Counted from the first letter of the stretch, positions 24,755-49,094 are shown. The stretch is DNA of 64,000 bases from Ylistrum balloti (GCF_031769215.1 NW_026781899.1:310001-374000), one strand, 5' to 3'. Numbers and translations: made by a program. The notes: generated by a model from the sequence alone, not told the origin.

Positions 24755-25043
24755 GATGTCTTCCCTTGGGCGAAAGATGCCACTTATACAGACATATCTA
24801 CATGTATGACATACCTTGTATGAGGTGTCTACCCTGGGGTGAAAGATGCCACTTTTACAGACATATCTACATGTATGACATAAATTGTATGAGGTATCTT
24901 CCCTTGGGTGAAAGATGCCACTTATACAGACATATCTACATGTATGACATAAATTGTATGAGGTGTCTGACCTTGGGTGAAAGATGCCACTTATACAGAC
25001 ATATCTACATGTATGACATAAATTGTATGAGGTGTCTACCCTG
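24755..25043. repeat. 69-bp tandem repeat, about 4 copies
   Basis: GAAAGATGCC at 24772, 24841, 24910, 24979. Confidence 0.95.
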
Positions 25044-25286
25044 GAATGGTCATTTTAAAACTCATGTCCAGCTCTAGAATTGATATCAAGTTAGCATGGG
25101 TGGAATGAAAATCTAAGGCAAGCTGCAGGCTGCTTTCTTACAGTGGTAATTGAACAGCAGATGTCCAGCTATTGAGTGGATATCTACAAAATGTACAAGG
25201 TGCTCGCCCTCCTAGTTTGATTATTGAACAGATGATGTCTAGCTGTGGAGTCCTTATCCACAACACAACTTGAGGGGATTGTCGCC

Positions 25287-27130
25287 ACTAGTGTGATAAT
25301 GTACAACACAAACTGTAGGTGTCCCCCCCCCACAACTAGTGTGATAATGTACAACACACACTGTAGGTGTCCCCCCCCCCAACTAGTGTGATAATGTACA
25401 ACACAAACTGTAGGCGTCTCCCACCCCCCCAACTAGTGTGATAATGTACAACACAAACTGTAGGTGTCCCCCCCACCAACTAGTGTGATAATGTACAACA
25501 CAAACTGTAGGTGTCCCCCACCCCCCCCCCCCCCAACTAGTGTGATAATGTACAACACAAACTGTAGGTGTCCCCCCCACCAACTAGTGTGATAATGTAC
25601 AACACAAACTGTAGGTGTCCCCCCCAACTAGTGTGATAATGTACAACACAAACTGTAGGTGTCCCCCCCCCAACTAGTGTGATAATGTACAACACAAACT
25701 GTAGGCGTCCCCCACCCCCCCAACTAGTGTGATAATGTACAACACAAACTGTAGGTGTCCCCCCCACCAACTAGTGTGATAATGTACAACACAAACTGTA
25801 GGTGTCCCCCCCCCCCCCCCCCCCCAACTAGTGTGATAATGTACAACACAAACTGTAGGTGTCCCCCCCACCAACTAGTGTGATAATGTACAACACAAAC
25901 TGTAGGTGTCCCCCCCCAACTAGTGTGATAATGTACAACACAAACTGTAGGTGTCCCCCCTCCAACTAGTGTGATAATGTACAACACAAACTGTAGGTGT
26001 CCCCCCCAGCTAGTGTGATAATGTACAACACAAACTGTAGGTGTCCCCCCCCAACTAGTGTGATAATGTACAACACAAACTGTAGGTGTCCCCCCCAGCT
26101 AGTGTGATAATGTACAACACAAACTGTAGGTGTCCCCCCCAACTAGTGTGATAATGTACAACACAAACTGTAGGTGTCCCCCCTCCAACTAGTGTGATAA
26201 TGTACAACACAAACTGTAGGTGTCCCCCCCAACTAGTGTGATAATGTACAACACAAACTGTAGGTGTGCCCCCAACTAGTGTGATAATGTGCAACACAAA
26301 CTGTAGGTGTCCCCCCCCAACTAGTGTGGTAATGTACAACACAAACTGTAGGTGTCCCCTCCCCCCAACTAGTGTGATAATGTACAACACAAACTGTAGG
26401 TGTCCCAGCCCACCAACTAGTGTGATAATGTACAACACAAACTGTAAGTGTCCCCCCCAACTAGTGTGATAATGTACAACACAAACTGTAGGTGTCCCCC
26501 ACCCCCCAACTAGTGTGATAATGTACAACACAAACTGTAGGTGTCCCTCCCCCCCAACTAGTGTGATAATGTACAACACAAACTGTAGGTGTCCCCCCCC
26601 AACTAGTGTGATAATGTACAACACAAACTGTAGGTGTCCCCCCCCCAACTAGTGTGATAATGTACAACACAAACTGTAGGTGTGCCCCCAACTAGTGTGA
26701 TAATGTACAACAAAAACTGTAGGTGTCCCCCCCCAACTAGTGTGATAATGTACAACACAAACTGTAGGTGTCCCCCCCAACTAGTGTGATAATGTACAAC
26801 ACAAACTGTAGGTGTGCCCCCCAACTAGTGTGATAATGTACAACACAAACTTAGGTGTCCCCCCCCAACTAGTGTGGTAATGTACAACACAAACTGTAGG
26901 TGTCCCCTCCCCCCCCCAACTAGTGTGATAATGTACAACACAAACTGTAGATGTCCCCCATCCCCCCAACTAGTGTGATAATGTGCAACACAAACTGTAG
27001 GTGTCCCCCCCCCCAACTAGTGGGGTAATGTACAACACAAACTGTAGGTGTCCCCTCCCCCCCCCCAACTAGTGTGATCATTTACAACACAAACTGTAGG
27101 TGTCCCCTCCCCCACCCCCCCACCCCCCAT
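25287..27130. repeat. Minisatellite: 37-bp constant core plus variable C tract, about 40 units
   Basis: AACTAGTGTGATAATGTACAACACAAACTGTAGGTGT followed by C-rich tracts of about 5-20 nt. Confidence 0.97.
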
Positions 27131-31192: not shown

Positions 31193-32754
31193 TTAATCAG
31201 AATCTATTTCTTTCTTGACGTAAACTTCGGTGTCCAAAACTGGAATTACAGCTACACAATGATCAGGAGAATCATAATTTTTAACTTCTGGAACAGGTTT
31301 AGGTACTGGAGTATCTTCTTCTTTAGAAAGATAAATGTAAGCAAGATTTTGGGACTGTGAAGGCTGTTCTTTTACTGACTCACGATTAATATCTGTTTGA
31401 TGTGAATGTTCTCTTGAACAAGGATCTTTTTCAGAAACTTCAAACGCATGGTCAATATTGCCAGTCATTCCGGCATTGTCCTCATTCACAAACTGACTCT
31501 GTGCAGACTGCTCTGCCAGTGAACCATGATTGACATAAGCCTGATGACTAAAACGTTCATATTCTGAGTCAACACTTTCTATTTTGACATCAGTCTCAGG
31601 ATTTGTCTGATGCTGTGAATTTGAGTGCAGAAGATCAAATTCTGGGTCAACTGGTTCACTCTTTATTTCATTTCCTGGGTAGTTATCAAACTCTTGATCA
31701 CTGATGTCGCATGCCATATCTTGGTGTTTCCTTAAAGCTGCTGAAGATTGTGAAATTAAACAACTTTTCCCTGATTTGACTCGTTTTCCAATCTTGACAT
31801 ACATCTTTCCACTTGAGTGGTTTTCTACTCGTTCATCACAATCATCATGTTCATCTTCCTCCTCCTCATTAGAATCATCGTCATCTTCATTGTAATTTGA
31901 ATGGGTGTCAAATCTTAACTTGTATTGTGACTGGCCTATATGCATTGTGGTTGGTGATGAATGATTACTGTTATATGTATTTCTATAGGAGCTAGAAGCC
32001 TCTCCTCCTAAACCTCCTACACCTGTAAAATCAAAGGAAGTTGGCTCAAAGTTGTCATTATTTGGTAGCTTTGATGGTGTACGCCTTTTCTTATAAACTC
32101 TTGGCTTTTTAACAATGAGTTTGTCATGTTCACTGGGTGGCCGTACTATATACACAACCTTTGTTACAGGTTTAATTGATCCTGGCATTGACTCATTCAA
32201 TTGCTCTAATTTCTCATATGTGTTCTGTGAAGGTTTCGTTTTCTGAGCTAACGAATCCACATCAGAAGTTTTTTCGCATGATGAGCAGATAACATTATCT
32301 TTTTCAAAGTGCTTGTGTCGTTTAAAGACTTTTTGCCCATTACAGCCAAACAACAGGTTCCTAAAGCACAAACAACATTGTACAACATTTGGATTAGGTT
32401 CCTTTGGTGTTCCGTTATCTTTTTCCCATTCTATATGGTACTTTGAAGGTCTCCCCCGAGTTCGCTTTTTTTCGTGGCTAGTGCTTACAGTCTGGTATGC
32501 TTTTGGTGTGCTGTTTAGCTTTGAAGCAATTTCAAAACCTATAAGTCCTGGTCCCATATGATCATAATCCTCCTTCATTAAATTCATGTCAGCATTGTAA
32601 CAACCTGAAGACTTATATTGATCAGATGTTGATCCTGTATGTTGGTTGTAATTTGGTGTTGATTCCACATGCTGATTATTGTCATATGTTGATCCAGCCA
32701 GTTCCTCTTTTTCAGATTTTGCTCTTATTTGTTCATGAACTGGCTGATCCAGAG
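31193..32754 (-). CDS. Uncharacterised AT-hook/C4-motif nuclear protein (paralog B), large terminal exon
   Basis: About 520-codon open frame after acceptor TTTACAG; RGRP motif, CxxC..CxxC motif, acidic tract. Confidence 0.85.
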
Positions 32755-33334
32755 CTGTAAATAAAACATAAAAAAAATTAATATCGTACAACTGAGGAAT
32801 ATAAAAAAATAATCCAGCTACAACTTCATAAGAAATAAACTGACATAACTAAAATGTATGAATCAAAAAAGATATGTGTCATTGTTGTGCTTAAAGTCAT
32901 AAATATCACTTGTAATTATGATGATTGGATCATTTCTATTTAAAGAAAAGATGGTACAACTTGATAAACGTCTTGTAAAATATGCATGTGTGGTTCAACA
33001 GTTTTGTGAACTGCATGCTATCTAGAACTACTGACATCAGACACTTTTCATGTGTAACCACATATAGAATACTACCTGTTGGAGGAGACCCGACTTTCTC
33101 TCTGCGATTGACATATGCAGATTGATAGCAGGAATCCTTCTCAACATCATAGGCTTCTAAAGTAGTTGGAATCAGTTCTGATGTTCTGTCAGAATATCAG
33201 CGTCACCACAGTCAGATATCTGGAGTGTGCATACACCACAGATAGTCCTTCAAAAGGACTAATGCAATGTATTGTTAGAAGTAAAAAAGGGAATACAAAT
33301 TAGTTTGTGAAAGAACATGAAAAATACTAATTCC

Positions 33335-33545
33335 TTCCGCGCGTCCCGAACAGGAATCGAACCCTTAGTTTCCGACATGATAATCCACGGCTCTACCAGG
33401 CAGAGTAAAATGCTTTCCACGCTCAGTGACAACTCGACCTATTTTGTGGTACATGTACAAGCCACAACGATCCGCTATGTAAATAACATGAACTCCTGAC
33501 TATTTTGAACTTCATTTTTCGCCATACACGTCAATGGACCTAGAT
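33335..33545 (-). mobile_element. Repeat with degenerate tRNA-like segment in paralog B intron
   Basis: TGGTAGAGC A-box-like and GGTTCGATTCC B-box on minus; no intact cloverleaf. Confidence 0.45.
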
Positions 33546-33629
33546 GATCATATTATTTCTACCGGGGAATTAGCGACCGGATCACTCAGGACGCGTCCCT
33601 TTCAATTACATTAATACTAAAGTCCTTAC

Positions 33630-33735
33630 CTAGAATTTCATTGCGTTTTCTTCTGTTTTTGGCTGTCCTTACTTTGTCCTTTTCTTTACGCACACGATAG
33701 GGTTGCTGTTTTATTTTCCGTGGCATTGTGGACAT
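33630..33735 (-). CDS. Paralog B exon 1 (MSTMPRKIKQQPYRVRKEKDKVRTAKNRRKRNEIL)
   Basis: ATG, 106 nt, donor G|GTAAG, phase 1 matches the terminal exon; ends EIL like paralog A. Confidence 0.75.
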
Positions 33736-33908
33736 CAGAAAAACGGAAGAGAACGCCAATTTACATGGAATATAAGTTGAAAATCCTCTTCTTCAGTCAT
33801 TCAGACAAAATTTAACCGGAAACAGCACTTCAATTATAAACTTCAGTCGTGACTCAGTCCGGTGTGAAAAATCCGGATGCGGTGGAAACCAACACTTCTC
33901 GCCCAAAT

Positions 33909-34144
33909 CAGGGACGTATAAGAATTAAACTAGGCCCGGGGTTGATTTCTCTTGCTTTAACTTTTAGATCACTACACCATGAATTAGCGAAGTCACCACT
34001 TCTTACTGATGCCAATGAGTTAGCACTGACCAGCCTAACCAGGGCCATTTTGACCACCAGTGAGATGTGAATTTAATTTATTTTAATAAATTAAAGTAAC
34101 TTATCACAAACCGTATAGGAGTCAGTCTGTAATATACGTCCCTG
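33909..34144. mobile_element. 236-bp MITE-like element with 12-bp TIR CAGGGACGTATA
   Basis: Perfect 12-bp inverted ends, one base different from the footprint family; 7-bp flanks match only 4/7. Confidence 0.45.
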
Positions 34145-34334
34145 GCTAAACCCAGAAAATAATATCAATCTAGCGCATGGAAATTATGTTGGTATGGATT
34201 AGTGCAAGTTAATAATAGCCACATGAACATTCTCTCTGTGACGTATTGTAGCTTTATCTAGATCTGTGGTGTAAAATAAACGTTGCTTTTTTCGTATGTA
34301 ATTGGAAGAACTAACGACAAACACCCTGTCATCA

Positions 34335-34532
34335 CTCGGGTTCGAACTAGTAACTCTTCGGTCTCTAGCCGGACACTCTAGCGCTCGACTAATGAGAAGC
34401 AACTTGACTGGGGCTCGAACTAGCAACCTTTACGCGGTCTCTAGGCGGACACTCTTGCGCTCGGCTAAAGAGAAGCAACTTTGCTGGGGTTCGAACTAGC
34501 AACCTTTCCGCGGTCTCCAGGCGGACACTCTA
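34335..34532 (-). repeat. Tandem tRNA-like units (73-76 bp, about 2.7 copies)
   Basis: TCGAAC at 34342, 34415, 34491; A/B-box-like motifs on minus. Confidence 0.7.
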
Positions 34533-35379
34533 CATACTTTTTTTAATTTACAGTGTGATCATTTTTGGCTATGTTGATCAGGTATATGGATATAAACAGA
34601 ACAAAACCTTATCTTCAACGATGGAGTAAGTCCAGTCATGGGAACAGCCAAAAAAGAAGCAATCTGACTTTACACTACATATATATGGACACACTGGGTG
34701 TTTGTAGGTTAGCACTGTTGTATTAAACTGGAGACGACCAAACGTAGATATTTGTGAAAAAAATCATTTTCAACAGATGACATTATTTTTTCTCAGTCCT
34801 GTGTATAATATATAGAGATGTACAAGACTGACTGTACAGACTTTCAGCGAGGGTTTTTACCAATGAATTACCAGAAAACAATGTAGCCTAGAGGAATTAG
34901 AAAGTAAAACAAGCAGTTGCTTTTTGATTGAGTTTCTTTCAAATTCCAATATTCCTAACAATTTCAGTAACCCAATAAAAAACAAAAAACCTGGGGACAA
35001 AACCCTACTTATGTATGACTTGGGGCCTTTATCTTACCAAGAATATGTTTATTATTCTTATATTTGCCAGTAAAAAAACCCAAAAAAGCCAGACCTCAGT
35101 TTTATTAATCTTCCCTAACTTCAGAAGTTGATGCCCAGGGGAAAGCGTTGCATACGTTAAAGAAATTTCCTTAAATTCTTTCTCTTTCTTAAACTTACGT
35201 AATGCTTTTCTGTGGTAGTTACGGTCTATTTAAAGGTTAAGATTTGTGAAATTGGGACCGGGCTTTTGATATTTGAACCATATGTCTTGACCTATGGCAA
35301 TACCTTAACAAATTATTTAAAGACAGTTAAGAGATAAATTAAGACGAAAATTAGCCACGGATTTAAATTTCTTTCCATA

Positions 35380-36670
35380 AGGTCATCAAGTATATACCAG
35401 TATGACTGAAAATTCGACATTGACCTCTGACCTGACGACCTTAGTACAGGTGACCTGCCTATAATTGGGTCATATTTGCCTCGTGAAGTCGTATTTATCA
35501 GAATATACATGCTATTAATATCAGTATACCACCATTATCTCAAGGTCATCGTAATTTTTCATTTTCGGAACATATTTCAAATGTAATGAATGCTGACCAC
35601 TGGTGATGTGTGGACCTTTTCAGCACAATTTGGTAAAACATTATAATAAAATTGTATACTTATATATACATTTGACCTTGAAGTTAAGATCATAGTGACC
35701 TAATCAGTAATATCAGTGCATGGCATATACCTATGTTTAATGAAATACTAAGGTAAACTTTCATTCGGTTTCATTTTTCATCCAGAAAAATTGCCAACAT
35801 GTACTATAAATATCCAATTATCGGACCTTTATCCTTAATCTTTCCATAAATATCTCAATCCTAGACTTTCTGGGCTATAGCAACTTGTATTGACTTTTGA
35901 CCATAACATTACGCCAAGCTTTAGCAGTTGACCAATAAACAAATTTGTACAATCGAGATTCCAATGTGGCTATTTCTGTGACGAAGTACAAAAGTCCGTA
36001 ACACAGTGACCATACTCTACGACATGACAAAGCCATTTCAAAGTGCACCCTTGGAGGAATATCAGCACTATAGGTTTACCAGCATGGGAAATATGGCTTG
36101 AATAAATGGTTGCCATGACCGGGGTAAAGGTCAAGGTCACTGTGAACTACACGTACTTCTAATATACTACACACTGCCACCCACAGGTGTACCCCAAGTT
36201 GCCACATTTGGTATGAAAAGATAGTATAATGAAATTTGGCCCTAAAAATATATATTTCTGGAATGGTCCATGTCAAGGTCACAACAACCTAATTTTAAGA
36301 CACAGCAACCAAAGGAACCACCCTGGCAACTTTGGTATTATAAGGTTAAATTGTATAGGAAATATGATCAAAATAGGCTCTTTGTATGATTGAAGTCAAA
36401 GATCTATATCAAGGTCAAAGCTTCATGTTCTGTCATAGCACACCAGCATCCCAAGGAGGTGTAAAATTTATACTGTAGTACTAGGTTGTATGGTAGTGGC
36501 AACATGGTCAAAGTCAGGTATTTCCATAATTGAGGTCAAAGGTCAATGCCAAGGTCAAATGATGTGTCCATATGCAACAAAGGTAGCTTTACAAAAATAA
36601 AATGGTATATGAAATATAGTATATAGAGGTTAAGGTCAAACTGAGGTGAGATTAATGTCAAAATCACATG
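35380..36670. repeat. Degenerate interspersed repeats rich in TGACCT(T)/AAGGTCA motifs
   Basis: Many TGACC/GGTCA motif copies; family not assigned. Confidence 0.4.
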
Positions 36671-37717
36671 AAGTGTTTCAAGTGGTGTTACACAGATGTT
36701 TCATGTTATCTATCCCTGTGACACAAAATGCAGATCAAGGTCATTTACAAACACTCCGTTTTGAGTGCCTTCAGTATACTTGAAAGAAGATAGGTTCTTC
36801 AATGAAGGATATCCTTGGATGCTGAATTTTAAAGCTGCCGAAGCCAGGACAATGCTAGGGTCACCTGATTGGAATCTCTTCGATCCTTTGGAAGTTCTTC
36901 CATTTTTCAGACATGCCTCTCTCCAAATTTTGGAAACTTTATGGCTCTGCATGAATTTAACACATATTTCAATAACTTATGTCATGTATTTCCAAGATGC
37001 TTTATCAGTTTTCTATGAATGACTTTGAGGTAATTTCAAGTATGCATGTGTTTCAACATAGAGACTATACAAGGGGAGGTATATGCTGATCAAAATTCTT
37101 CACAGGTAAAAAATATCGAAACAACACACCTGGTGTTGTCTTATAATTTCTGAGCTGGGGTGTTGTGTATCAAATAAACTTATCAGATGTAAATATATAT
37201 ATCTGAATGGTTGAAATGTGAGTTACAGTACACCTTTTCATGGTAATAATAGTATAAAGTTTCAGAGATTGAAATTACATACACCACAGGCAGAAGATAC
37301 ATGTACCTGTGCATAAACTAAACAGGAACTGTTCTTAAATTACTGAAGTTAGACGACTGAATGCCCCATTTTTATCATAAGATCAGTTTTAGAATGAACA
37401 AAGGGCCAGAATTCTGTTTATACAAATGTAGTCAGATGACAATCTAGGTGATTCCAGTATGCAACACTAATATGTTCATAGAAGTACATAATATTGTTAA
37501 TTCAACAGGATCTCCTTCAGTACAGTATTAATGAATAGTGAAACTTCTCATTTAATAAAATATTGATGTTTTGTTGGTTATCATGTATGAGACATTTGCA
37601 GTAGAATTTTTTTCAAATCACTTACAGTTTTTGAAGGTCCTAGGGGCATTGTTTAATGTTCTCTGACCAATGGCAGTTTGTGTTTCTCAGTAAGTTGAGA
37701 AAGTGATCAGTCTGTGC

Positions 37718-37875
37718 AGACGTGGTCCTTGGTAAAGGCACTTTACCCTAATTGCTCTAGACAGCATGCTACGAGCCTTGTGTAGGTTGTTCTATGGGAT
37801 ACAATATCTTAAGGAGTCCCCACCTCAAAACGACCTGGCTGTTCACGGGGCGATAAACGCAGCATACAAACAAAA
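37718..37875 (+). mobile_element. SINE-like fragment
   Basis: GTCCTTGGTAAAGGCACTTTACCC core and ...GATAAACGCAGCATACAAACAAAAC tail. Confidence 0.45.
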
Positions 37876-38061
37876 CTGATACAATATGTCTATATAGATT
37901 CAGGAATATCTAAATGCACCTGTAATATTTATTGGATCTTGACAAGCCTTTATTTCCATATATTATGATCACCTGTAATATTTAAGCCAATCTTTTTAAA
38001 TGTTAACAAACAATCAAACACCGTTATATTTTACATTTTATTAGCTGTTATTACATCTAAA

Positions 38062-38580
38062 ATAAGACAATGACTTACTCAGTATATCTGATAATGACTT
38101 ACTCAGTATATCTGTATTCATGACTAAGATAATGACTCAGTATATCTGTATTCATGACTAAGATAATGACTCAGTATATCTGTATTCATGACTAAGATAA
38201 TGACTCAGTATATCTGTATTCATGACTAAGATAATGACTTACTCAGTATATCTGTATTCAGTGTATCTGTATTCATGACTAAGACAATGACTTACTCAGT
38301 GTATCTGTATTCATGACTAAGATAATGACTTACTCAGTGTATCTATTCATGACTATGATAATGACTTACTCAGTATATCTGTATTCATGACTAAGACAAT
38401 GACTTACTCAGTGTATCTGTATTCATGACTAAGACAATGACTTACTCAGTGTATCTGTATTCATGACTAAGATAATGACTCAGTATATCAGTATATCTGT
38501 ACTCATGACTAAGATAATGACTTACTCAGTATATCTGTATTCATGACTAAGATAATAACTTAATCAGTATATCTGTATTG
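38062..38580. repeat. 34/38-bp minisatellite
   Basis: GACTAAGATAATGAC(TTAC)TCAGTATATCTGTATTCAT units. Confidence 0.93.
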
Positions 38581-39272
38581 CCTGTTTATTGCTGAGGTAT
38601 GTTCCTTTATGTTCCTTTGTCCAAACAACAGCTGTGTAGAGTTGAGCCAAGTCTGGATCTGGCATGGTCTTGACATGAACTTCTGGTTTTTATATATGGC
38701 TGCTAAGACTTCAAGCTTGTTAACTTTTTACAGACTTGTTGTCACAAGAAGTCTCTATCATAAGATCCTATTATGTTGTTTAGTTTAGATATTAAGTTTT
38801 CTTGTATAGGCAATAAAAATCAGTACAGATTTAACAATATACCATACTATTGTCTTTAACAATTATCTTTATAAAAAAAGATTCATTCATGATACTTAGA
38901 ATACAGACTTTAGGTTTAAAAACCAATAGTGAAACTGTCTCCACATGTAGATTTCAGAATTTAAAATAACTGTATGAAATTATGTCAACATTTGTAACAG
39001 TATGGTAAAACTTAACAAATAGATAATCAGATACCAAGATACAATGATCTTGATAACAGCCTTACAAAATTCAATTCATCTACATTTTGTAGGATTCTTA
39101 AAACATTTGGTACATTTTCATTTCATAGGTGGTATAAATGTATATGAAATAGTTTCTCTCAGAAATCATACAAAACCATACACATAAATATTCACATACA
39201 ACAGCAATACCTTCACAACATTGAAACTTAACAAGTATGAAATGTTTGTCATGATTTGGCTTCATCACCCTA

Positions 39273-40963
39273 TCAAAAGTCAATAGGTTCGTGTTTAATT
39301 GATCGTACATCTAGAATGATAGGAAGACCTGATGTTGTAGCATCCTCTCCAGCAATGTTTGTGTTGTCTTGCACCAAGTTTGGTTCTGGACCCAGATCCT
39401 GCACAATTTTTTCATTTTGCTGAACGCCAGACTCAGACAAATGATAAACAGGGAGAGGTTTGACATCAGTCAAGACGACAACTGTAGCAGTATCCATTTC
39501 TGCCTCTTGGACCACTGATAGCAATCCATCTTTAGATGAATGGATTACAGGGTCTTCTACTAAATCGGGAATTTCACTGTTTATGTCCTCTTTTTCCTTT
39601 TTAACTTCGCAACCGAGGTAATTTGCAACTGCAATGTTCTCTGCCTGTCCGTTTATCAGCATAGTGTCATTCCCGAGATCTTCCATTACAGTTTTCACAC
39701 AGGGATCACTCCACATTCCATCATTCTGTCCTTGGTTTTCCTGCCCTGTAGTGGATCTCATGACTGCAACATCATCACTATACACATACACCTTTTGATT
39801 TTCATTATCCCACTCTACACAGACCTCCTTAGAAGTGCCAGCTTTGATTGTCACTGGATTTGTAATGCTGTCCGATGTACCAACATTATTATCATTAGAG
39901 TTACTATTGACCTCTTGTAGCGAACCTGTACACAAGTACGAGTATCTTAATTTGGCATTCTCATCATCATCGATAATGTTCTGTTCAAGACATTCTGATG
40001 TTTCATTTGTGCGGATGTGAAGCGGATAATGGTGAAATACAACATTATCTTCACCTCCTCCAACCTCGTTTTGACATTGTCTATCAATCTCCTTCTTCAC
40101 ATGTGGATACCCCCTCGTAATATCAAAATTAGAGGTGTTTGTTGTGACTGTTTCTAGCTGAGGTATTGTCACATGGTTTCCTTGACTGCTGACATGGACT
40201 TGGATATCTAATGATTCTAGGTTTGGTTTTATATCTGTTGATACTTGTGATTCATAGGGTGCACTACAAGGTACAATTTTTATAGCATCACCTTCGTTGT
40301 TCCTTACAGAACTTATTCTTCCCACATCTTCTGTAACTTGTAAAGACTTTGTAATTTCATCTGAGAAACCTTCTCCAACATTTTGTCTCGTATTAGTCAA
40401 TTCATAGGATACCGCCTTATTAATTTCCTTTGACACAACATATGTTTTAACATGTCCAACCTTTGGTTTGATATAAACATTACTGCGTTTTACAACAGTT
40501 TGTATGACTTCCTTGTCGGCTGGTGGCATTACCACATACACATTCTTTGAAAAGAGCTTGCCATCCTCACTTTCGTCACTATCACTTCCTAAGTCAATCT
40601 TTTCATATCTGTTTTTGGCCCTGTTTTTTTCAAACTCTGAAGAGAATTGAAGGTCTAGTTCACAGAAAGGACAGGTAACATTTTCTAAACTTCTGTCCAC
40701 ATTATCCTTACCAAAAAGTAAATCTCTCATACAAACTGGGCACTGCTGTGTCTTCTTGTTTTTGTCACTGCAACGAGTTTTTGCTTTGTTTCTCACTTGT
40801 CTCTGTTTTATTTTCTCCTGAAGTTTCAATAGAACAGATCCTTCTGTTTGCATTTTAACATCAGTTATGTTTGGTTTTTTCTTTAGGGAATCTGCATTTA
40901 TTTCAGATTTTTTTCTTCTGAGAGGCCGTCCAGGTCCACGCTTCACAACAGGAACTTCACATT
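39273..40963 (-). CDS. Uncharacterised AT-hook/C4-motif nuclear protein (paralog A), large terminal exon
   Basis: About 563-codon open frame after acceptor TTTTTGCAG; GRP motif, CPVC..CPFC. Confidence 0.85.
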
Positions 40964-42265
40964 CTGCAAAAACAGAACAAAAAAAAATTAATAAGAAATT
41001 GTACAACCCTCCTCTGAGCCCAACTTGGCCATCAATTAATGTACAAAGGGCAATAACTCTGTACATAACAAAACTTGCAAACAAAGAATTTTGAAACATA
41101 TACATACTTTATGTAAGGCACTTAAAGCTTCTCTTAACAGTAAATTTATGAAATCTTTTGAAGATAAAACAGGTTAACTTTATGGCATGTTCAAATGAAA
41201 TATAGATCATAAATATATGGTTTTAGGAGCCTTATCCACAATCCAAGTTTATGACAATTTTAATTTAGTTAACAGTTCACCTTCAGATTTCTTGCCAATG
41301 GCTTGCATTGGATTCAACAAAGTATTGTGAGACTGGAACAAGTAAATTTTCTAGCCAATTATAGTAATTTAACCAATATGAAAGTATGGCCCACACTTTT
41401 TCATTTTCCAGAGAAGTCTTTGTGGGATTCTGAAGATAATAGATATTATGTCTCTTTAAAAGGTAGAAACTTTGAGATTAAGGATGCCCAGACAATATCT
41501 TTTTGTTCATGTGGATAAATGCCTTTTATTCAGCATTGTCTCAAAGAAGTGACCTGTAACTTGAGATGTCTCTGGAGCACATGACATGAATAAGTACTGA
41601 TAACATGTAGGAATCTTATGTGTAAACTTTAAAAGGAAAAAATACAATTATTTTTTTAACATTCACTAGATAACATTGATTAGTTACAAAAATGCATGTA
41701 TATTTGTAACCATATTAATTTCAAGTAGAATTAATTTCATTTTGCTCTGTTTTGTATTTTAGATCTGAACCTAAAAAATTGTATATACAAATTCATCTGA
41801 TCAATGAATAATTTACCTTATTTCTGTTTAGTGTTAATGTGATAAGAGAAGTAACTCATTTGCCAGCAAAACCATTTTTCATGAATGATTTGTACTTAGA
41901 AAACATATTCAGAGAAAGAGGATCAAAATGGATATAACTTCTAGAAATGTACATCTTTTCCGATATAAAACTTGAAAAAAAATATAGACACGTACAAAAC
42001 AGCACACCAAGACAAAGCATGACCAGTTCACTAAGTAATGTGAACCGCATCGTACGTAGATCACAGCTGCTAGCTGTGTTCTGGAACATAAATGCAAGCT
42101 CAAGAAGAAAAATACCCCTATTTATTAGTAAATACTATTTGTTATTTACTTTCTTCTATTTCTGAAACACGTACGTATGCTAAAGAATGATTTACTCTTT
42201 TTTTTCTTTCGTTATAATGAAAGTGCTGTAGATTGTGCAAAAACTGCTATTTTGTTTTCAGTTAC

Positions 42266-42317
42266 CTAGGATTTCTTGCGACCGTTTTCCAGTCCGACTC
42301 CTTGTACTTGTAGACAT
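42266..42317 (-). CDS. Paralog A exon 1 (MSTSTRSRTGKRSQEIL)
   Basis: ATG, 52 nt, donor G|GTAAC, phase 1 matches; about 110 bp from an ETS/YY1-like motif. Confidence 0.72.
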
Positions 42318-42426
42318 TGCTATTACAACTGAGATTCCAGTTCTTCAAATTTGCATAATAACAATACAAAACAACGTAACAAGTTTACTACAATGTAGCG
42401 TGTGCTGATAGATGCAGATTGACAAC

Positions 42427-42438
42427 CCGGAAATGGCG
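42427..42438. promoter_or_regulatory. Overlapping ETS/YY1-like motif CCGGAAATGGCG upstream of paralog A
   Basis: Motif about 110 bp upstream of the inferred ATG; ACCGGAAA is similarly placed (about 33816) upstream of paralog B. Confidence 0.45.
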
Positions 42439-42524
42439 CATTGTTAGTAATTGTAAATTCGGAAAACGTGATAACAGTTCCGAAATGATGCGGCATCGAT
42501 TATGTAGCGGGCATTTGGTCAAAC

Positions 42525-42544
42525 CAGAGATATATACGTCTCTG
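42525..42544. mobile_element. 20-bp TIR remnant with 7-bp TSD GTCAAAC
   Basis: GTCAAAC-CAGAGATATATACGTCTCTG-GTCAAAC. Confidence 0.7.
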
Positions 42545-43679
42545 GTCAAACCGATATCAAATGATGAATAAGTTTATTAAATTCATATTTTATGTGTTTT
42601 AATTACAGAAATAAATTATAAATAATATTACTGGTCACTTTTGGACAGAGCGCTCAGAGCTTCAACATCGTCGAAGTATGATAACAGCCAGTCTAGCGAC
42701 CATGAGAGGTAGCGGCACTAGAGCCTAGAATTGTACACGTAAGTACTATGTGTAGAATTAGCAACTAGTAACTAGTAACTATTTAATAATATATTTGATT
42801 AAAGGCATATTTTTGTTTAAAAATAAAGTTGATATTTTGACAGTGTGTTAATTCAAATATCGGGCGTGGTCGATTTAACAGACAGGTGGATCCGAGAAAA
42901 CCCTCTTCACACTGACGAGGAGGATATTTTTTATATATGTAGTATAATTGGATACCAACTGTTATTTCTATATAATTTATAGATTGATTTTACAGTTGTA
43001 ATGAATATGTATATGTGGTTATATTATATGATTATCTTATCGTAAGATTGTGTTTGTATTGTAGTAATATGATGTATTTCATGTTACAGGTTTTTTGTTA
43101 TTGTATTAATAAAACTTTGAAGAAAAAGAACTCAGCAGTTGTTTTGATGACATTAAAGACAACTTTTACCCTTTATGCAATCTTATGACACATATATGCA
43201 ACATGAACACCTCCAATATGCAACATGCAATTGGCCAGATCAATACTGATTTTTCAAATTAGGAAAGTTTTTCATGTATTTTTCCTATAAAGGTGACCGA
43301 GTCCAACATTACATAATTACAGAATTGGAAGCTGCGGCAGAGTTGCATGTAAATACCTTTTTTTAGTACCTAAAACTACGAACAAGATGACGGTATGTGC
43401 CGTATTAGCCATATATATGCGTGCTGCGCCCCCGCATGGTTGCCACTGTATTGATTGTTTCTGTAGTTGAGTGCATTTAATGAAATACTGTAGATTTGAC
43501 AGCAACAGTCAGTCTATCATATATATAGTTTGAACAAGCAAGAAGGAAAACAGAAATAACTACTTAGATGTATTATATTGGAGTGTATAGCTGTGTAGAA
43601 CAGTCTATGAACTAAACTTTGATGTTTCAAATGATATACTTCTGTAATTTTGGTTTACTCTTTCTAAATAATTTTCATG

Positions 43680-46600
43680 TTATATGTACTTAATGTTACC
43701 TTTTGTGTTTGTCCTTTTAATTCCAGGCTTTCTCATTGTCGTCTTCCTTAAAATTGCTTTCTTTTTTATAGTCCTCTTTTCATGCTTTACCCCATGGTCA
43801 TGTTTATTCTTTTTTGTCCCTGTAACCCGATCTTTTCTGTTAAATGCTTCATTGATCGTTTCTTTCTGTTTCCCTGCTCTGTCACCCAGTGCTTTATCAT
43901 CTCGTGACTCATTTTCCGTGTTGACTCCGCCTTTCTGTGTAACTCCCTTATGACCCGTTTCCTTTCTGACTGATACGTTTTTGTCTGTTGCTTTTTCAAT
44001 GGGGTAATTCTCCTTTGGGTTGATACAATGTCCATCCAAACCGACTTCTAACTTAATGTATTTCTTTTTGAAAGGTAGTCGTCTGGATGTCATAGAGATG
44101 CCTTTCACTTTTTGCATACATGACTCAGAAACCTCATCTGACACGATAGCTAGTTTGGGTTTCAGCATGGTGCCTTCACTTTTGTTCAGTTTGAACAAAT
44201 CCTCTTTGGAGACCTTTTCGCCATCCAGTTTGCTTGTATACTGCCTGCGAGCAGGACCCACTTCGGAAAATTTACCACAATTCCGAGGCTCTGTGGTCTC
44301 TCTCGACTCTCCATGAAAATTCTTTTTTGCCAGAGTTGTCCCTTCTGTGTGTTTTCTTGGAGATTTATTGTTGCCCTTCATTCGATCGGTGGATAAAAGT
44401 TTCTTTTTTCTCCTCATATGTGTCGATAATGATGCTTGTCTCATTTTTCTCTGCCTTTGAACAGCTGACATCATGCTTGATTTCCTGCGCAAGTACTGAA
44501 GCTGACGTCTCTTGGCCTCGTCATGCATAGCATCTAGATCCATAAACCAACATTTTGGTTTTTTCCCGCTTTTCTGGAAGTTAAAGCGGAAACCCTTTGT
44601 GGCAAGAGGTAGCCTGAAGTTATCATCAAATCTGGTCCATGTAGAATGGGAGGTGGCATCACGAACAAAGGACAGGTTTTGCTTTGCTGGTAATTCACCA
44701 CTTTCAGGGTCTTGATTTTCAGGATTTTGTGTGTTTTTACTAGCATCACTGTGGTCTATTCTAGTGTTCCCACCTGTTTGCCCTAAACTTACTTGATCTG
44801 CGCCAATTTGAGGTGAAGCAGATTGCATTATTTCATCTTCATTCTCTTCAGATTGTAATGGTTGATTTGCTTCCATACCAAGAGTATCACAATCAATTTG
44901 AATGTCGTTTTTCTGTTGATCTTTGTTGTCATGACAACTATGATCAGGATTGCTAACAAGATTATCTTCTTCATCTCCACTTTTCTGCTGTTCTTGTCGA
45001 TATTCCTCTTTTATAGATTGTAACTGCGTGTCTTCACTCATCAAAAAGACGCAGCTGGTTACAGTTACATTCTCCTCGTCTTTTGATATCTTAATAGTGT
45101 CCTCCTTAGGATCTTTTTCCTCGAAGCAATTTCTTTGTCTATCAACTCCAGAATCTTCACAATCAGCTTGATCATCAGACCTTATTTCGTTCTCAGCATT
45201 TCCAGATGGCATCGGGTCATTTTCTTCAACACTTGGCTCCTTAACCGCATTGCTTGCGACAGAAGATAGTTGGGCATTGATAGTATCGCCAAGTGCTTTA
45301 TCCTGTACACAGTACTCCATCTCGTTAATACCCTCGTGCATTTCTGTTGTGTCATCTTTGGTATCTTCCAGATGTCTATGACTCCTGTTTTCTTTTATGT
45401 TTCCACTTGAGCTGTTGTCTTCTAAAATAACCACTGACTGACCACTTGGAAAGTTGCCAGTAGAATGTACACCGTTACAATTATCTACGGAGTGCCGTCT
45501 TTGACCATTGTCTGTTTTTTGCGTATCAATACCTTTGTCTTCCAAGTGCCTACTGATGCCAGTGTCTTTATCGACCCTACTACGACTTTGCTCACTTTGA
45601 CCTTTGTTTAAGGAAGGCCCACTTTGGTAAATGTCTATTGTGTGCCCTCTTTGATCACTGTCACCTGAAAGTTCACTTTGAATATTTTCTGTTAAAAGCT
45701 GACTTTGACAAATGTCAACAGACTGTAGATGTTCACTGTCATCAGCTAACCTTTCACTTTGACTGTTTTCTGTTGAGTGTTCATCAGCTGATTGTCTACT
45801 GTTACCCTTTTCTGCAGAGATCTCCATTTGTCTATAACCAGCTGACTGTCCATCGTCATTCATTTTTGTAGAGTGATCAGTTTGACTCTTGTCACTGGAC
45901 TGTCCACCTTTTTCTGTTGTGTTCCCCATTTGACTGTCGCTGCCAACCGATTGCTCACTTTGACTGTCCTTATCACGATGTCCACTACGACCATTTATTA
46001 TACTTGTTCCGCTGTCTAGTGAACGTCCACATTGACTTAAGTCTGTTAAGTGTTCAGTTTTAAAGTTCTGTCTGCTATCACTACCTTTCTGTCCATTATC
46101 AGTCGAGTCACTTTCAACTGTAACTTGCTTCTCACTCCGACGATTCTTTTTCGGTCTTCCCCTTCCCCTTTTTTGAGACTGCTTGTTATTTTGATTTTTT
46201 TCTGTTGTACGCTCACTTTGGACGTCTTCAGTTGACTGTTCACTGCGCCACTTACCTGTGGACTGTTCAACTTGAAAAACGTCCACGGATTGTCCTCTTT
46301 CAATGTCCTCAGCTAACCGTCCACTTTGATAGCCATTTGACGGTCCATTTTGTGTCGTTTCTGTCGAGTCCTCAATTTGAATATCGTTACTTGGCTGTTT
46401 ATCTTCACTATTTTCTGTTACATTCCCAATATGACCTCTAATGTCTTCTGAGTGCTCGCCATAACTGTCTTTACCTCGCTGTCCACTGTGATTATTTAAT
46501 GTGCAGTGCCTAACACATTTTGGATCCCTTAAATCTGTTCCTTGCTTCTCACCGTGATGATTCTTTTTCGGCCGTCCCCTTTTCTTCTTTTGAGGTTCCT

Positions 46601-49094
46601 TATCTGTGGTCTCTACTGCAATCCCATTATCTATGTTCTGTTTTTTCCCTGATTTTTTACTTGAGGTCAAATTAGTCTTCGCCTTTTTCCTTGGTCTTCC
46701 CCTTCTCTTCCTCTCAGGGTTATGCTGTTGTTCACGGGCAGCCAAGGGCGACTCACTTTTCATTTCCGAACTTTCAGTGTATGACTGAGATGCGTTTGTG
46801 TCTTCATCACTGTTGCCTTCTTGTTTAATTTGTTTCATGAGATGATTTAAACCCGTTTGATTCTCGGATGTGTCTTCATCTTCATCTATCTCCCCTTTGA
46901 TCAATGTCATGTCTAATTTATCCAAGCTCTTTAATTTTTCGATCTCCTTCTTGGTATGCATTCGTTTGTAATGCAGCTGTAACTGACTGTGCCTTTTATA
47001 TGGCTTCTTGCATAATTCACAAAAGAAAGCATAGTTCCCATGCATTGTACCCACATGAGCCAAGAGGTTTTGTTGAGATCTACCTCCATATGGACAAAGA
47101 GGACAGCGATAGGGACGGTTTGTGAGGTCATGAGTTACCATATGCGCTTGCTTATTTGACTTGCTAGCAAAGGTCCGACCACAAACTTCACAGGAGAATG
47201 GTCTTATACCATTATGTAGCTGCATATGCTTTCCAAGAGACGACTTGACCTTGAAAGTCTTTTCACAAATGTCACACTTAAATGGTCTTTCGGTAGTGTG
47301 CCTTTGGGTGTGCTTGTTCCTTGCTGATGGCGATTTGAAACATTTTCCACATAAAGGACACGGGAACTTCCTTTCTTCTGAGTGAACATGCATGTGTTTT
47401 GATAAATCTGATTTAGTTTTACAGGCTTGTTGACAACCAGGATGTGTACATGGAAATGATCTAACATCACTGTGCTTAAACTTGTGGAGATTCAGTTCAT
47501 AATTTGTTTTACATCGAAAATCACACTCTTCACATGAAAGTGGTTTTAATGAAGTATGACGATAGATGTGATATTTCAGGTCACACGATCTCTTAAAAGA
47601 ATGTCCACAAATTTCACAATGGAATGGACGGTCATCCACATGGCTCAAAAGATGACTTGAAACATTTCTCCTCCATTTTGTAGTGAAGTCGCAATAAGGG
47701 CATTTGTAATTTTTGACTTTTGAATGTTTAGCCTGATGACGCTGCAGGTCAATTCGAGATCTGGAAGCGTAAGGGCACAGTTCACACTTAAATGGTTTAG
47801 CTTTGGTGTGTTTTGATTCATGTTCCAAAAATGATCCTCTACTTCTAGCTTTGAAGTCACAGTATGAACAGTATATAAATGGCATGACATGTGTTTTCCT
47901 ATGTTTTATCAGCTTAGGACGTTCCTGGAACACCAAGTCACAACGATCACATTTGAAATTTCCAATCACAGGGGGCCTGCCTATTCTATGTTTTTTCCTC
48001 CTCAATTTTTTCTGCCGACCATGTATACCTTTACTTTTTGCTAGTGAACTTGATGTAAGTTCTTGGTTATTGTCACGAGAAAAGGAAGTGTCTTGCTCAA
48101 CTTTGATTTGTTTCAAAGCTGGTTTAGAATTACTCTTGTAATTCTTTGGAGGCATGCTTAAATGTCCTGTACTTTCACATTCTGTCGGTGATTGGGTATT
48201 GATATCAGCAACACGAAATCCAATTATTCTTTGCTGGTCTTGCTCTGACACACTGGTGTAGGAATCTTCGTTATCTGCTGATATAGAACTTGTTGAAGCT
48301 GTTGCTGTCTTGGTTGCTGTTTTCAGCGGCCTACCTCTTTTTCGTTGTGGAGCGATTTCAAAAGGAAGAGTTGATTGAAGCTTATTACTCTCTGCCGATT
48401 TTCCAAGATTAGCTAACTTCACGCTCTGTTCATCAAACACGTTACAGTTGCTTTCAAGTATATTCTCTGTAGCATTAACCCTAGATTCTCCTGTTTCTGT
48501 TCCGTCTCCTCCAACAAATACATAATCGGCTTCCTCTGTATCGTTTGCAATTTCAAACACAAAGGATTCTGACTGTCTCTTCTTTTTTGATTTTTTAGGT
48601 GTCACCCTTGCATGTGTTTTGTTCTTTTTGCGGCGTTTCTTACGAGCTGGACTTTCTCCGTAAGCTTTAATCATGGGAGACACTTCTTCAGTTGTGCCGT
48701 CTGAAAGGCTGCTACTTTGTGGTTCTGGCAAACAGACATTTTGTAGTGCTAGGTTACATTCATTGGCACTATCAACATCTGACAGGGTTGGGAGTATACT
48801 CCAACAAACATCTACTGTTTTCTCAGAATCTTTACTGCTCTGTTCACAATCAGTCTCTTTCTTGGATATCTGAACAGGGATGTGTGCTATATTGTAGATA
48901 TTTGCAGATGGTGCCACACTGGTGTTGAATTGTGGTAAATTCATTGGAGTAACAGCCTCTGTTCCAGTTTTCATTGTCAATGAGTCATTTGTTGTACTAT
49001 TTAACACCTGGAAAGGTTTCGTTTCCATTTCGTCGTCATCTGAGATGTTCTCGTACACAAATCCACTTATCTTCTGTGAATCATAACACTCCAT
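43680..49094 (-). CDS. Large C2H2 zinc-finger protein (1804 aa; 12 fingers, several AT-hooks), single coding exon
   Basis: 12 tandem CxxC..HxxxH fingers counted at about 46955-47955, some with linkers like TERPF/GIRPF; GRP AT-hook-like motifs; acceptor TTCCAG three bases before the ATG. Confidence 0.93.
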   Translation of the reverse strand: MECYDSQKISGFVYENISDDDEMETKPFQVLNSTTNDSLTMKTGTEAVTPMNLPQFNTSVAPSANIYNIAHIPVQISKKETDCEQSSKDSEKTVDVCWSILPTLSDVDSANECNLALQNVCLPEPQSSSLSDGTTEEVSPMIKAYGESPARKKRRKKNKTHARVTPKKSKKKRQSESFVFEIANDTEEADYVFVGGDGTETGESRVNATENILESNCNVFDEQSVKLANLGKSAESNKLQSTLPFEIAPQRKRGRPLKTATKTATASTSSISADNEDSYTSVSEQDQQRIIGFRVADINTQSPTECESTGHLSMPPKNYKSNSKPALKQIKVEQDTSFSRDNNQELTSSSLAKSKGIHGRQKKLRRKKHRIGRPPVIGNFKCDRCDLVFQERPKLIKHRKTHVMPFIYCSYCDFKARSRGSFLEHESKHTKAKPFKCELCPYASRSRIDLQRHQAKHSKVKNYKCPYCDFTTKWRRNVSSHLLSHVDDRPFHCEICGHSFKRSCDLKYHIYRHTSLKPLSCEECDFRCKTNYELNLHKFKHSDVRSFPCTHPGCQQACKTKSDLSKHMHVHSEERKFPCPLCGKCFKSPSARNKHTQRHTTERPFKCDICEKTFKVKSSLGKHMQLHNGIRPFSCEVCGRTFASKSNKQAHMVTHDLTNRPYRCPLCPYGGRSQQNLLAHVGTMHGNYAFFCELCKKPYKRHSQLQLHYKRMHTKKEIEKLKSLDKLDMTLIKGEIDEDEDTSENQTGLNHLMKQIKQEGNSDEDTNASQSYTESSEMKSESPLAAREQQHNPERKRRGRPRKKAKTNLTSSKKSGKKQNIDNGIAVETTDKEPQKKKRGRPKKNHHGEKQGTDLRDPKCVRHCTLNNHSGQRGKDSYGEHSEDIRGHIGNVTENSEDKQPSNDIQIEDSTETTQNGPSNGYQSGRLAEDIERGQSVDVFQVEQSTGKWRSEQSTEDVQSERTTEKNQNNKQSQKRGRGRPKKNRRSEKQVTVESDSTDNGQKGSDSRQNFKTEHLTDLSQCGRSLDSGTSIINGRSGHRDKDSQSEQSVGSDSQMGNTTEKGGQSSDKSQTDHSTKMNDDGQSAGYRQMEISAEKGNSRQSADEHSTENSQSERLADDSEHLQSVDICQSQLLTENIQSELSGDSDQRGHTIDIYQSGPSLNKGQSEQSRSRVDKDTGISRHLEDKGIDTQKTDNGQRRHSVDNCNGVHSTGNFPSGQSVVILEDNSSSGNIKENRSHRHLEDTKDDTTEMHEGINEMEYCVQDKALGDTINAQLSSVASNAVKEPSVEENDPMPSGNAENEIRSDDQADCEDSGVDRQRNCFEEKDPKEDTIKISKDEENVTVTSCVFLMSEDTQLQSIKEEYRQEQQKSGDEEDNLVSNPDHSCHDNKDQQKNDIQIDCDTLGMEANQPLQSEENEDEIMQSASPQIGADQVSLGQTGGNTRIDHSDASKNTQNPENQDPESGELPAKQNLSFVRDATSHSTWTRFDDNFRLPLATKGFRFNFQKSGKKPKCWFMDLDAMHDEAKRRQLQYLRRKSSMMSAVQRQRKMRQASLSTHMRRKKKLLSTDRMKGNNKSPRKHTEGTTLAKKNFHGESRETTEPRNCGKFSEVGPARRQYTSKLDGEKVSKEDLFKLNKSEGTMLKPKLAIVSDEVSESCMQKVKGISMTSRRLPFKKKYIKLEVGLDGHCINPKENYPIEKATDKNVSVRKETGHKGVTQKGGVNTENESRDDKALGDRAGKQKETINEAFNRKDRVTGTKKNKHDHGVKHEKRTIKKKAILRKTTMRKPGIKRTNTKGNIKYI

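What the first reader, a model, noticed from the sequence alone, without database searches (positions are those of the whole stretch)
32080..40950. Two tandem paralogs share an unrecognised AT-hook plus four-cysteine domain
Paralog A: QQCPVCMRDLLFGKDNVD-RSLENVTCPFCE..NRYEKI..KNVYVVMPP..VVKRSNVYIK. Paralog B: VQCCLCFRNLLFGCNGQK..EKDNVICSSCE..NTYEKL..KVVYIVRPP..IVKKPRVYKK. Shared pattern: QCxxCxRxLLFG-x(11-18)-NVxCxxCE, then YEK and VY(V/I)VxPP..VY, preceded in both by a GRP AT-hook-like motif. The rest is divergent and disordered-looking. I cannot assign this module to a named family. Inference: a lineage-specific zinc-binding chromatin or DNA-binding domain.
Basis: partly seen in the sequence, partly recalled or inferred. 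Interest (0 to 1): 0.72.

Follow-up and report, generated by a model that had tools for sequence, protein, structure and literature searches.

The report
Scallop-only four-cysteine module, duplicated gene
Two neighbouring scallop genes, a giant zinc-finger chromatin protein and a short copy of its last exon, share a conserved four-cysteine module of about 100 residues that matches no described domain family and was found only in scallops; it is a real but modest case of lineage-specific domain birth.

Summary
The window comes from the scallop Ylistrum balloti.

- **Paralog A** (39273-40963, minus strand) is the last exon of a 2361-aa protein with C2H2 zinc fingers and AT-hooks (XP_060073493.1).
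- **Paralog B** (31193-32754, plus a short first exon at 33630-33735) is a separate 555-aa gene (XP_060073310.1), a duplicate of that last exon.
- **Shared module:** QCxxCxRxxL[FY]...CxxC[EQ], then NxYEK, then VY[VI]VxPP. BLASTP gives E 1e-8.
- **Conservation:** the four cysteines are invariant in all eight aligned proteins (four scallop genera, both paralogs) and the pattern recurs in all 12 family proteins retrieved. Against Pecten, dN/dS in the core is 0.12 (B) and 0.25 (A), lower than in the tails.
- **Range:** an exhaustive HMMER search of 1.84 billion proteins found only scallop proteins. The genome has two copies. Oyster and other bivalve orthologues of the giant protein lack the module.
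- **Known families:** Pfam, PDB sequences and profile comparisons with BED and GATA fingers gave nothing. Genome scans for BED, FCS, GATA and ZAD did not hit either locus.
- **Structure:** AlphaFold2 confidence was low (pLDDT about 50), so the fold and zinc binding remain inferred.
- **AT-hook:** invariant in B, but present in only two of four genera in A.

Best reading: a scallop-specific single-zinc module in a SUMO-site-rich regulatory tail, more likely binding protein than DNA. Interest is modest.

This same stretch is logged in the scan as s1-246951; my one look-up (near this place) showed no note of it on other DNA.

The parts
43700..49094 (-). Large first coding exon of the giant gene (LOC132553272, XP_060073493.1). 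It runs from ATG at 49094 to donor G|GTAACA after 43700 and encodes 1798 aa plus the first base of a split codon. It carries about 12 C2H2 fingers (roughly 46956-47957) and four canonical AT-hooks.
   Evidence: The translation equals P0001 residues 1-1798 exactly. Pfam zf-C2H2 scores E 2e-30. Donor sequence read.
40964..43699 (-). Phase-1 intron of the giant gene, 2736 nt, GT...AG.
   Evidence: Sequence read. Boundaries GTAACA ... TTTTTGCAG confirmed.
39273..40963 (-). Last exon of the giant gene, which is 'paralog A'. It encodes 562 aa plus the stop codon.
   Evidence: The translation equals P0001 residues 1800-2361. The split codon G+AA gives E1799.
40923..40943 (-). Degenerate AT-hook-like KRGPGRP in exon A. 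It is canonical RGRGRP in Pecten and absent in Argopecten and Mizuhopecten.
   Evidence: Pfam AT_hook did not match the A ORF.
40461..40745 (-). Module A. QCPVC...(19 residues)...CPFCE occupies 40659-40745, followed by a predicted helix, NRYEKI, an acidic linker, VYVVMPP and VVKRSNVYIKPK.
   Evidence: dN/dS against Pecten is 0.25. The second individual shows no SNP in this stretch.
33630..33735 (-). First coding exon of the short gene (LOC132553112, XP_060073310.1). It encodes 35 basic residues, MSTMPRKIKQQ...RNEIL, with donor G|GTAAGG.
   Evidence: The translation equals P0002 residues 1-35. Homologous basic MPRK... N-termini occur in the Mizuhopecten, Pecten and Argopecten B proteins.
32755..33629 (-). 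Phase-1 intron of the short gene, 875 nt, GT...AG.
31193..32754 (-). Second and last exon of the short gene, which is 'paralog B'. It encodes 519 aa plus the stop codon.
   Evidence: The translation equals P0002 residues 37-555. The split codon G+CT gives A36.
32441..32470 (-). AT-hook KKRTRGRPSK of B. RGRP is invariant in the four B orthologues. It is followed by the conserved KY..EWE.
   Evidence: invariant R135 G136 R137 P138. Pfam AT_hook scores 12-12.7 bits, below the 17.4 cut-off.
32081..32380 (-). Module B. QCCLC...(26 residues, including the invariant VFKxHxHFE)...CSSCE occupies 32273-32380, followed by NTYEKL, KVVYIVRPP and VKKPRVYKKRR.
   Evidence: dN/dS against Pecten is 0.12.

Best explanation
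**Shown**
- The stretch holds the last exon of a giant nuclear protein with C2H2 fingers and AT-hooks.
- About 6.5 kb downstream on the same strand lies a two-exon gene. It is an old duplicate of that last exon, joined to a new short basic first exon.
- Both carry a module of about 100 residues found only in scallops. Four cysteines in two CxxC pairs, 19-26 residues apart, are invariant. Conserved NxYEK and VY[VI]VxPP segments follow.
- The module is under stronger purifying selection than the tails around it.

**Inferred**
- The four cysteines hold one zinc ion. In both models the second CxxC is followed by a predicted helix, as in treble-clef fingers. The YEK and VYVV segments are predicted to pair as a beta-hairpin.
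- The module is a small zinc-stabilised docking surface for another protein, in a tail dense with conserved SUMO-type sites (psi-K-x-E followed by acidic residues) and with a hydrophobic C-terminal stretch (ILDV in A, VIPV in B). It is less likely a DNA reader.
- The short paralogue lacks the whole C2H2 array but keeps an AT-hook, the module and the SUMO-type sites. It would therefore bind the same partner without the giant protein's sequence-specific targeting, acting as a competitor or adaptor.
For: - **Gene models:** each exon matches the RefSeq proteins exactly.
- **Similarity and conservation:** BLASTP E 1e-8; 16 invariant columns, including 4 Cys, across 8 sequences, 4 genera and 2 paralogues.
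- **Selection:** core dN/dS is 0.12 (B) and 0.25 (A), against 0.59 and 0.39 in the tails. A second individual shows 9 SNPs in exon A, none in the module.
- **Age of the duplication:** A and B separate with 100/100 support, one sequence per genus in each clade. Pecten maximus has the same gene order.
- **Range:** only scallop proteins appear among 1.84 billion representatives. The genome has only two copies.
- **Absent in outgroups:** oyster and other bivalve orthologues share upstream modules (E 1e-24) but have no CxxC pair in their C-terminal 400-800 residues. One of them is a single uninterrupted ORF, so no exon is missing.
- **Predicted elements:** both AlphaFold2 runs independently predict a helix after the second CxxC and a YEK/VYVV hairpin.
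- **Charge:** the A-type core and linker are neutral to acidic.
- **SUMO-type sites:** invariant psi-K-x-E motifs in both lineages.
Against: - No metal-binding or structural evidence. AlphaFold2 mean pLDDT is 49-50 and fold searches are null.
- The A+B+Zn complex prediction gave no verdict.
- No partner is known.
- The B-type core is basic (+1 to +4), sits 22 residues after an invariant AT-hook, and is followed by KKPRVYKKRR. Nucleic-acid contact is therefore not excluded for B.
- No RNA data were available, so the two transcripts rest on RefSeq models and cross-species conservation.
- dS is about 0.9-1.3, near saturation, so the dN/dS values are approximate.
Confidence: 0.5

Rival explanations
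1. One reading: the module is a DNA- or chromatin-binding finger that works together with the preceding AT-hook, perhaps as a remote BED-like finger whose His pair has been replaced by CxxC.
For: - The host is a chromatin-type protein.
- The AT-hook 22 residues upstream is invariant in B.
- The B core and the segment after PP are basic.
- The language-model search of the ESM Atlas put zf-BED clusters first, with scores 0.83 and 0.80.
- hhalign aligns the first knuckle, vvQCclCfRnLLfG, with BED a.CklC...l.ys, P 0.0085.
Against: - Atlas scores under 0.9 are reached by a third of shuffled proteins.
- hhalign probability is only 4.7% and 1.9%, over 20-22 columns.
- The Pfam BED model matches none of the 8 members, and the genome scan found 29 BED fingers but not these loci.
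- A-type has no His ligands and is neutral to acidic.
- The AT-hook is missing in 2 of 4 A orthologues.
Confidence: 0.25
2. A and B are mutually exclusive alternative last exons of one gene, as in mod(mdg4) or lola, rather than two genes.
For: - Same strand and same order.
- Both acceptors are phase 1.
- Both upstream exons end with G in the same phase, so the large exon could be spliced in frame to exon B.
Against: - B has its own coding first exon with an ATG and a good donor. Its basic N-terminus is conserved in other genera.
- RefSeq annotates separate genes in Ylistrum and Pecten, GenBank gives Mizuhopecten two adjacent locus tags, and Argopecten has separate protein records.
- Minus-strand AATAAA signals lie downstream of both stop codons.
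- No RNA run was available to test this.
Confidence: 0.1
3. This is not a folded zinc domain. It is a cluster of short linear motifs in a disordered tail, with the cysteines conserved for another reason such as redox, disulphide or lipid modification.
For: - AlphaFold2 gives low confidence in both paralogues.
- The Atlas's own model of B has pLDDT 0.39.
- Loop length differs between A (19-21) and B (26).
Against: - Two CxxC pairs invariant over a deep duplication, with conserved hydrophobic positions around them (L, F/Y, V, Y), is the usual signature of a structural zinc site in a nuclear protein.
- Shallow alignments (8 rows) often give poor models.
Confidence: 0.1

Closest known systems
zf-BED finger (Pfam PF02892; BEAF, DREF, ZBED proteins)
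   Same: Both are small fingers in chromatin and insulator-type proteins. The first knuckle and the strand after it look alike (xxVxxC-x2-C-xxxLxYxG). It was the top, though weak, language-model neighbour.
   Different: The BED ligands are C2H2 with a conserved upstream W..F. Here the second pair is CxxC, A-type has no His, and neither HMM nor profile comparison supports homology.
GATA-type and other treble-clef C4 fingers (PF00320)
   Same: Both have C-x2-C, a loop of about 17-20 residues, then C-x2-C, with a helix predicted after the second pair.
   Different: None of the GATA signature is present (TPLWR, CNACGLY). hhalign probability is under 1%. The loop is 19-21 residues in A and 26 in B. 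There is no basic tail in A.
ZAD (zf-AD, PF07776), the lineage-restricted C4 dimerisation domain of arthropod C2H2 proteins
   Same: The concept is the same: a clade-specific C4 zinc module attached to C2H2 zinc-finger proteins and used for protein contacts rather than DNA reading. The second pair also resembles ZAD in being preceded by a hydrophobic residue (VIC..C in B). The function and layout of ZAD are my own knowledge.
   Different: ZAD is N-terminal, about 75 residues long, with about 45-50 residues between the pairs (own knowledge). No HMM match was found here. Dimerisation is not supported here (one search gave no verdict).
mod(mdg4)/lola-type loci with serial alternative zinc-finger last exons
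   Same: Tandem, same-strand, same-phase terminal exons, each carrying a finger.
   Different: There are only two units. The second has its own conserved first exon and is annotated as a separate gene in four species. No BTB domain is present.

Membership tests
zf-BED (PF02892) | Match to the family HMM above its 20.6-bit cut-off | tested here: not met
   No BED hit for either ORF or any of the 8 members at E up to 10. The six-frame scan of the whole genome found 29 BED fingers, none at C42:342xxx or C42:350xxx.
zf-BED (PF02892) | C-x2-C ... H-x3-5-H/C ligand set with an upstream W..F motif | tested here: not met
   A-type has no His between or after the pairs. B has H-x-H (invariant H182, H184) and IEWE upstream. 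hhalign against 8 BED fingers from this genome gave probability 4.7% and 1.9%, covering the first knuckle only.
GATA zinc finger (PF00320) | C-x2-C-x17-18-C-x2-C with TPLWR and CNACGLY, and an HMM match | tested here: not met
   Spacing is 19-21 (A) and 26 (B). No HMM hit. hhalign probability is 0.5-0.8%.
zf-FCS / MYM-type (PF06467) | HMM match; C-x2-C ... F-C-S-x2-C | tested here: not met
   No hit in any member. The genome scan found one FCS finger, elsewhere. Only B has a loosely similar ICSSC.
ZAD / zf-AD (PF07776) | HMM match; about 75-residue N-terminal C4 domain | tested here: not met
   No hit in members or genome. The control genomes also had none, so the genome scan alone is weak evidence. 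The module is C-terminal and shorter.
AT-hook (PF02178) | R-G-R-P core flanked by basic residues | tested here: inconclusive
   B: KKRTRGRPSK with RGRP invariant in 4 genera, but the Pfam score of 12-12.7 bits is below the 17.4 cut-off. A: RGPGRP is degenerate, has no Pfam hit, and is absent in 2 of 4 genera.
Structural C4 zinc site (generic zinc knuckle, ribbon or treble clef) | Four invariant Cys in two CxxC pairs | tested here: met
   Invariant in all 8 aligned sequences, and the pattern is present in all 12 family proteins retrieved.
Structural C4 zinc site (generic zinc knuckle, ribbon or treble clef) | Tetrahedral zinc coordination | not testable with these tools
   AlphaFold2 models have pLDDT of about 50 and their coordinates cannot be read. 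This needs metal analysis or a solved structure.

The most novel reading that the evidence does not exclude
A new zinc-binding fold arose inside a disordered regulatory tail in the scallop stem lineage. It was then copied, by duplication of the last exon, into a free-standing 'headless' regulator that has been kept beside its parent since before four scallop genera diverged. That would be a traceable example of de novo domain birth followed by parent-and-decoy subfunctionalisation.
Probability: 0.2. Interest if true: 0.6.

Novelty: new variant of a known kind. Interest (0 to 1): 0.33.

Why it matters
The module is well bounded and datable. It is absent in oyster and other bivalve orthologues of the same protein and present in both paralogues of every scallop genus sampled. 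That makes it a tractable case of how small zinc modules appear in transcription-factor tails, and of how a terminal-exon duplicate can become a short partner of a giant DNA-binding protein. It also gives a handle on two 'uncharacterized' RefSeq loci found in four scallop genera, most of them fished or farmed commercially (own knowledge). It does not bear on a long-standing open question, and the function remains inferred.

Tried and rejected
- **Word search, module A:** none. The length filter excluded the true 2361-aa protein.
- **Pfam, both ORFs and all 8 module sequences:** only scattered, inconsistent sub-threshold zinc-ribbon and RING hits.
- **PDB sequence profiles:** best E 0.049 (CcmH) and 0.26 (AN1), not credible.
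- **ESM Atlas:** nothing for A. For B, a weak BED lead at 0.83.
- **AlphaFold2 on A-first and B-first alignments:** mean pLDDT 49 and 50.
- **Fold searches:** VIA-align wide, best Z 2.6; Foldseek PDB, no E below 2.7. Neither is usable.
- **Complex prediction, module A + module B + 2 Zn:** no verdict, score 0.00. This is evidence neither for nor against binding.
- **RNA evidence:** the only run holding the stretch (X1) covers the intron and the intergenic DNA continuously, so it is DNA. No splice or expression data were obtained.
- **B-type HMM against oyster and other orthologues:** no significant match. The oyster motif KRGRRSKGDFVIEWE resembles B's TRGRPSKYHIEWE by eye only.
- **Transposon or transposase origin:** rejected, because no relatives outside the two scallop gene lineages were found.
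Full report
**What is in the window.** The window is AT-rich (about 33-35% G+C) with sparse long ORFs, so it is eukaryotic. It is contig C42:310001-374000 of a 648-Mb assembly. The proteins it encodes are RefSeq records of the scallop Ylistrum balloti.

On the minus strand there are three long open frames:
- 43680-49094 (1804 aa), with about 12 C2H2 fingers (Pfam zf-C2H2, E 2e-30) and four canonical AT-hooks;

**The observation.** BLASTP of A against B gives a single significant segment: 34% identity over 103 columns, E 1e-8. The coordinates are right. The similarity is far beyond chance.

**Gene structure.** Both ORFs begin with intron sequence. A polypyrimidine tract and AG place the exon starts at 40963 (A) and 32754 (B), both in phase 1.

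The exhaustive profile search returned a 2361-aa protein, P0001 (XP_060073493.1). It consists of the 1804-aa frame up to a G|GTAACA donor after 43700, joined to exon A. It also returned a 555-aa protein, P0002 (XP_060073310.1). That one consists of a 35-residue basic first exon (33735-33630, donor G|GTAAGG) joined to exon B.

I checked this exon by exon without joining anything. Each exon's translation is identical to the matching part of the record, and the split codons are G+AA (E) and G+CT (A). So A is the C-terminal exon of a giant protein with C2H2 fingers and AT-hooks. B is a short gene built from a duplicate of that exon plus a new first exon.

**Distribution and age.** A profile of the two modules, run by HMMER against 1.84 billion representative proteins, found eight clusters. 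All are Pectinidae: Ylistrum, Pecten maximus, Mizuhopecten yessoensis and Argopecten irradians. Each species has one giant A-type and one short B-type protein, all annotated 'uncharacterized' or 'hypothetical'.
- The own genome has just the two copies, even when searched with an 8-sequence profile.
- In Pecten the two genes are adjacent, on the same strand and in the same order.
- A maximum-likelihood tree splits A from B with 100/100 support, with one sequence per genus on each side. The duplication therefore predates the split of these genera.
- A profile of the full-length A proteins found clear orthologues of the giant protein outside scallops: Saccostrea oysters (627 bits, one named 'suppressor of hairy wing-like' by NCBI) and two unnamed assemblies.
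- These share an upstream module, GFRLPLATKGF..KKPK.WFM (E 1e-24). Two of them also share the CDDVAVM and C-terminal motifs. None has a CxxC pair in the last 400-800 residues.
- One of them is a single 5.9-kb ORF, so no exon is missing.
- A further word search with the B profile found only the four scallop B proteins.

By parsimony, the module arose in the scallop lineage.

**Conservation.** In the 8-sequence alignment, 16 columns are invariant: Q, four C, R, L, N, YEK, V, Y, V, PP. The loop between the Cys pairs is 19-21 residues in A and 26 in B. The extra residues in B include an invariant VFKxHxHFE.

Codon comparison of Ylistrum with Pecten gives dN/dS of 0.12 (B core) and 0.25 (A core). 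The tails give 0.59 and 0.39. dS is about 0.9-1.3, so these values are approximate.

The one public run that holds the stretch is DNA of another individual. Of its nine SNPs in exon A, six are synonymous, three are replacements in the tail, and none falls in the module.

**The AT-hook.** In B, KK(R/K)(T/A)RGRP is invariant and sits 22 residues before the first Cys, though Pfam scores it below threshold. In A, the Ylistrum motif is RGPGRP, 60 residues upstream. Pecten has RGRGRP. Argopecten and Mizuhopecten have none. The AT-hook is therefore not part of the shared module.

**Comparison with known families.**
- Pfam on the ORFs and on all eight module sequences gave only scattered sub-threshold hits to unrelated zinc ribbons and RINGs.
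- PDB sequence profiles gave nothing credible.
- The ESM Atlas gave nothing for A. For B it gave a weak lead to zf-BED clusters (0.83, a level that a third of shuffled proteins reach).
- I tested that lead by collecting BED fingers from this same genome and aligning eight of them. hhalign gave 4.7% and 1.9% probability, aligning only the first knuckle.
- The same test with eight GATA fingers gave under 1%.
- Six-frame scans of the genome with zf-BED, zf-FCS, GATA and zf-AD never hit the two loci.

**Structure.** AlphaFold2 with the 8-row alignment gave mean pLDDT 49 (A first) and 50 (B first). Both runs predict a helix starting at the second CxxC and a hairpin pairing the YEK and VYVV segments. 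Fold searches were null. Coordinates could not be read, so the Cys geometry is untested. An A+B+Zn complex prediction gave no verdict.

**Mechanism (inferred).** Two CxxC pairs, invariant across a deep duplication and surrounded by conserved hydrophobic residues, are the usual mark of a structural zinc site. A helix after the second pair suggests a treble-clef-like knuckle.

The A-type core and linker are neutral to acidic, while the B-type is basic. No basic surface is shared, which argues against a common DNA-reading role and for a protein-contact role.

Both tails carry invariant psi-K-x-E sites followed by acidic residues:
- B: EIKxEPVD, VKIExVD, (V/I)K(K/Q)E;
- A: VKxEKED, LPIILDVRSIKxEP.

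Each also has a hydrophobic C-terminal stretch. Motifs of this kind are typical of SUMO-regulated transcription cofactors (own knowledge).

The short paralogue keeps the module, an AT-hook and these sites but lacks the C2H2 array. The simplest model is that it engages the same partner without the giant protein's targeting.

**Rivals.**
- A BED-like DNA finger acting with the AT-hook, mainly for B.
- Alternative last exons of one gene. The phases are compatible, but B has its own conserved first exon.
- A non-zinc cluster of linear motifs.

**Verdict.** The finding is real and correctly described, and the module is unassigned and restricted to scallops. It is a new variant of a familiar kind of element, a small Cys4 module in a zinc-finger protein. 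It has an unusually clean evolutionary history but no experimental or structural support for function yet. Interest is modest.

Noticed in passing
window 44532-44651 and 44046-44210 (minus strand; P0001 residues 1482-1521 and 1629-1683): Two further strongly conserved modules with no Pfam match lie in the giant protein: STWTKFDDNFRLPLATKGFRFNFxKxGKKPKCWFMDLD and SKEDLFKLNKSEGTMLKPKL...LPFKKKYIKLE. The first is shared with oyster and other bivalve orthologues (E 1e-24), so it is older than the C4 module.
   Followed up: partly
P0013 and P0014 (Saccostrea), C-terminal region: The oyster orthologues have KRG(R/K)R(S/P)KGDFVIEWETG, which resembles the B-type AT-hook context TRGRPSKYHIEWEKD. This suggests B preserves an ancestral AT-hook-IEWE motif that scallop A lost. 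An HMM search gave no statistical support.
   Followed up: partly
window 38062-38612: A tandem array of about 14 copies of a 34-38-nt unit (…CTCAGTATATCTGTATTCATGACTAAGATAATGACTTA…) lies just downstream of exon A's stop codon, probably in or after the 3' UTR of the giant gene.
   Followed up: no
window 34359-34510: Two tandem 76-nt copies (89% identical) contain GGTTCGAACTAGCAACC-like tRNA-type sequence. This may be a tRNA-derived SINE fragment, upstream of gene B's first exon.
   Followed up: no
window 58415-58497 (+): A tRNA gene (Rfam RF00005, 63 bits) sits next to about 2 kb of G+C-richer minisatellite at 58662-60714, which gives long spurious ORFs in several frames.
   Followed up: no
window 60732-61193 (+): An ORF with a ...LPGLKNLTDEDRLKDLGLPTLAFRSLKGDMIEAYKI... 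motif, typical of the C-terminal part of LINE-type reverse transcriptases (from memory, not tested).
   Followed up: no
window 24700-26648 and 52967-53341: Further minisatellite arrays produce repetitive pseudo-ORFs.
   Followed up: no
L004 24670-27701 (Pecten maximus): In Pecten, an F-box gene lies on the opposite strand downstream of the B gene. I did not check whether the Ylistrum window has the same neighbour below 31193.
   Followed up: no
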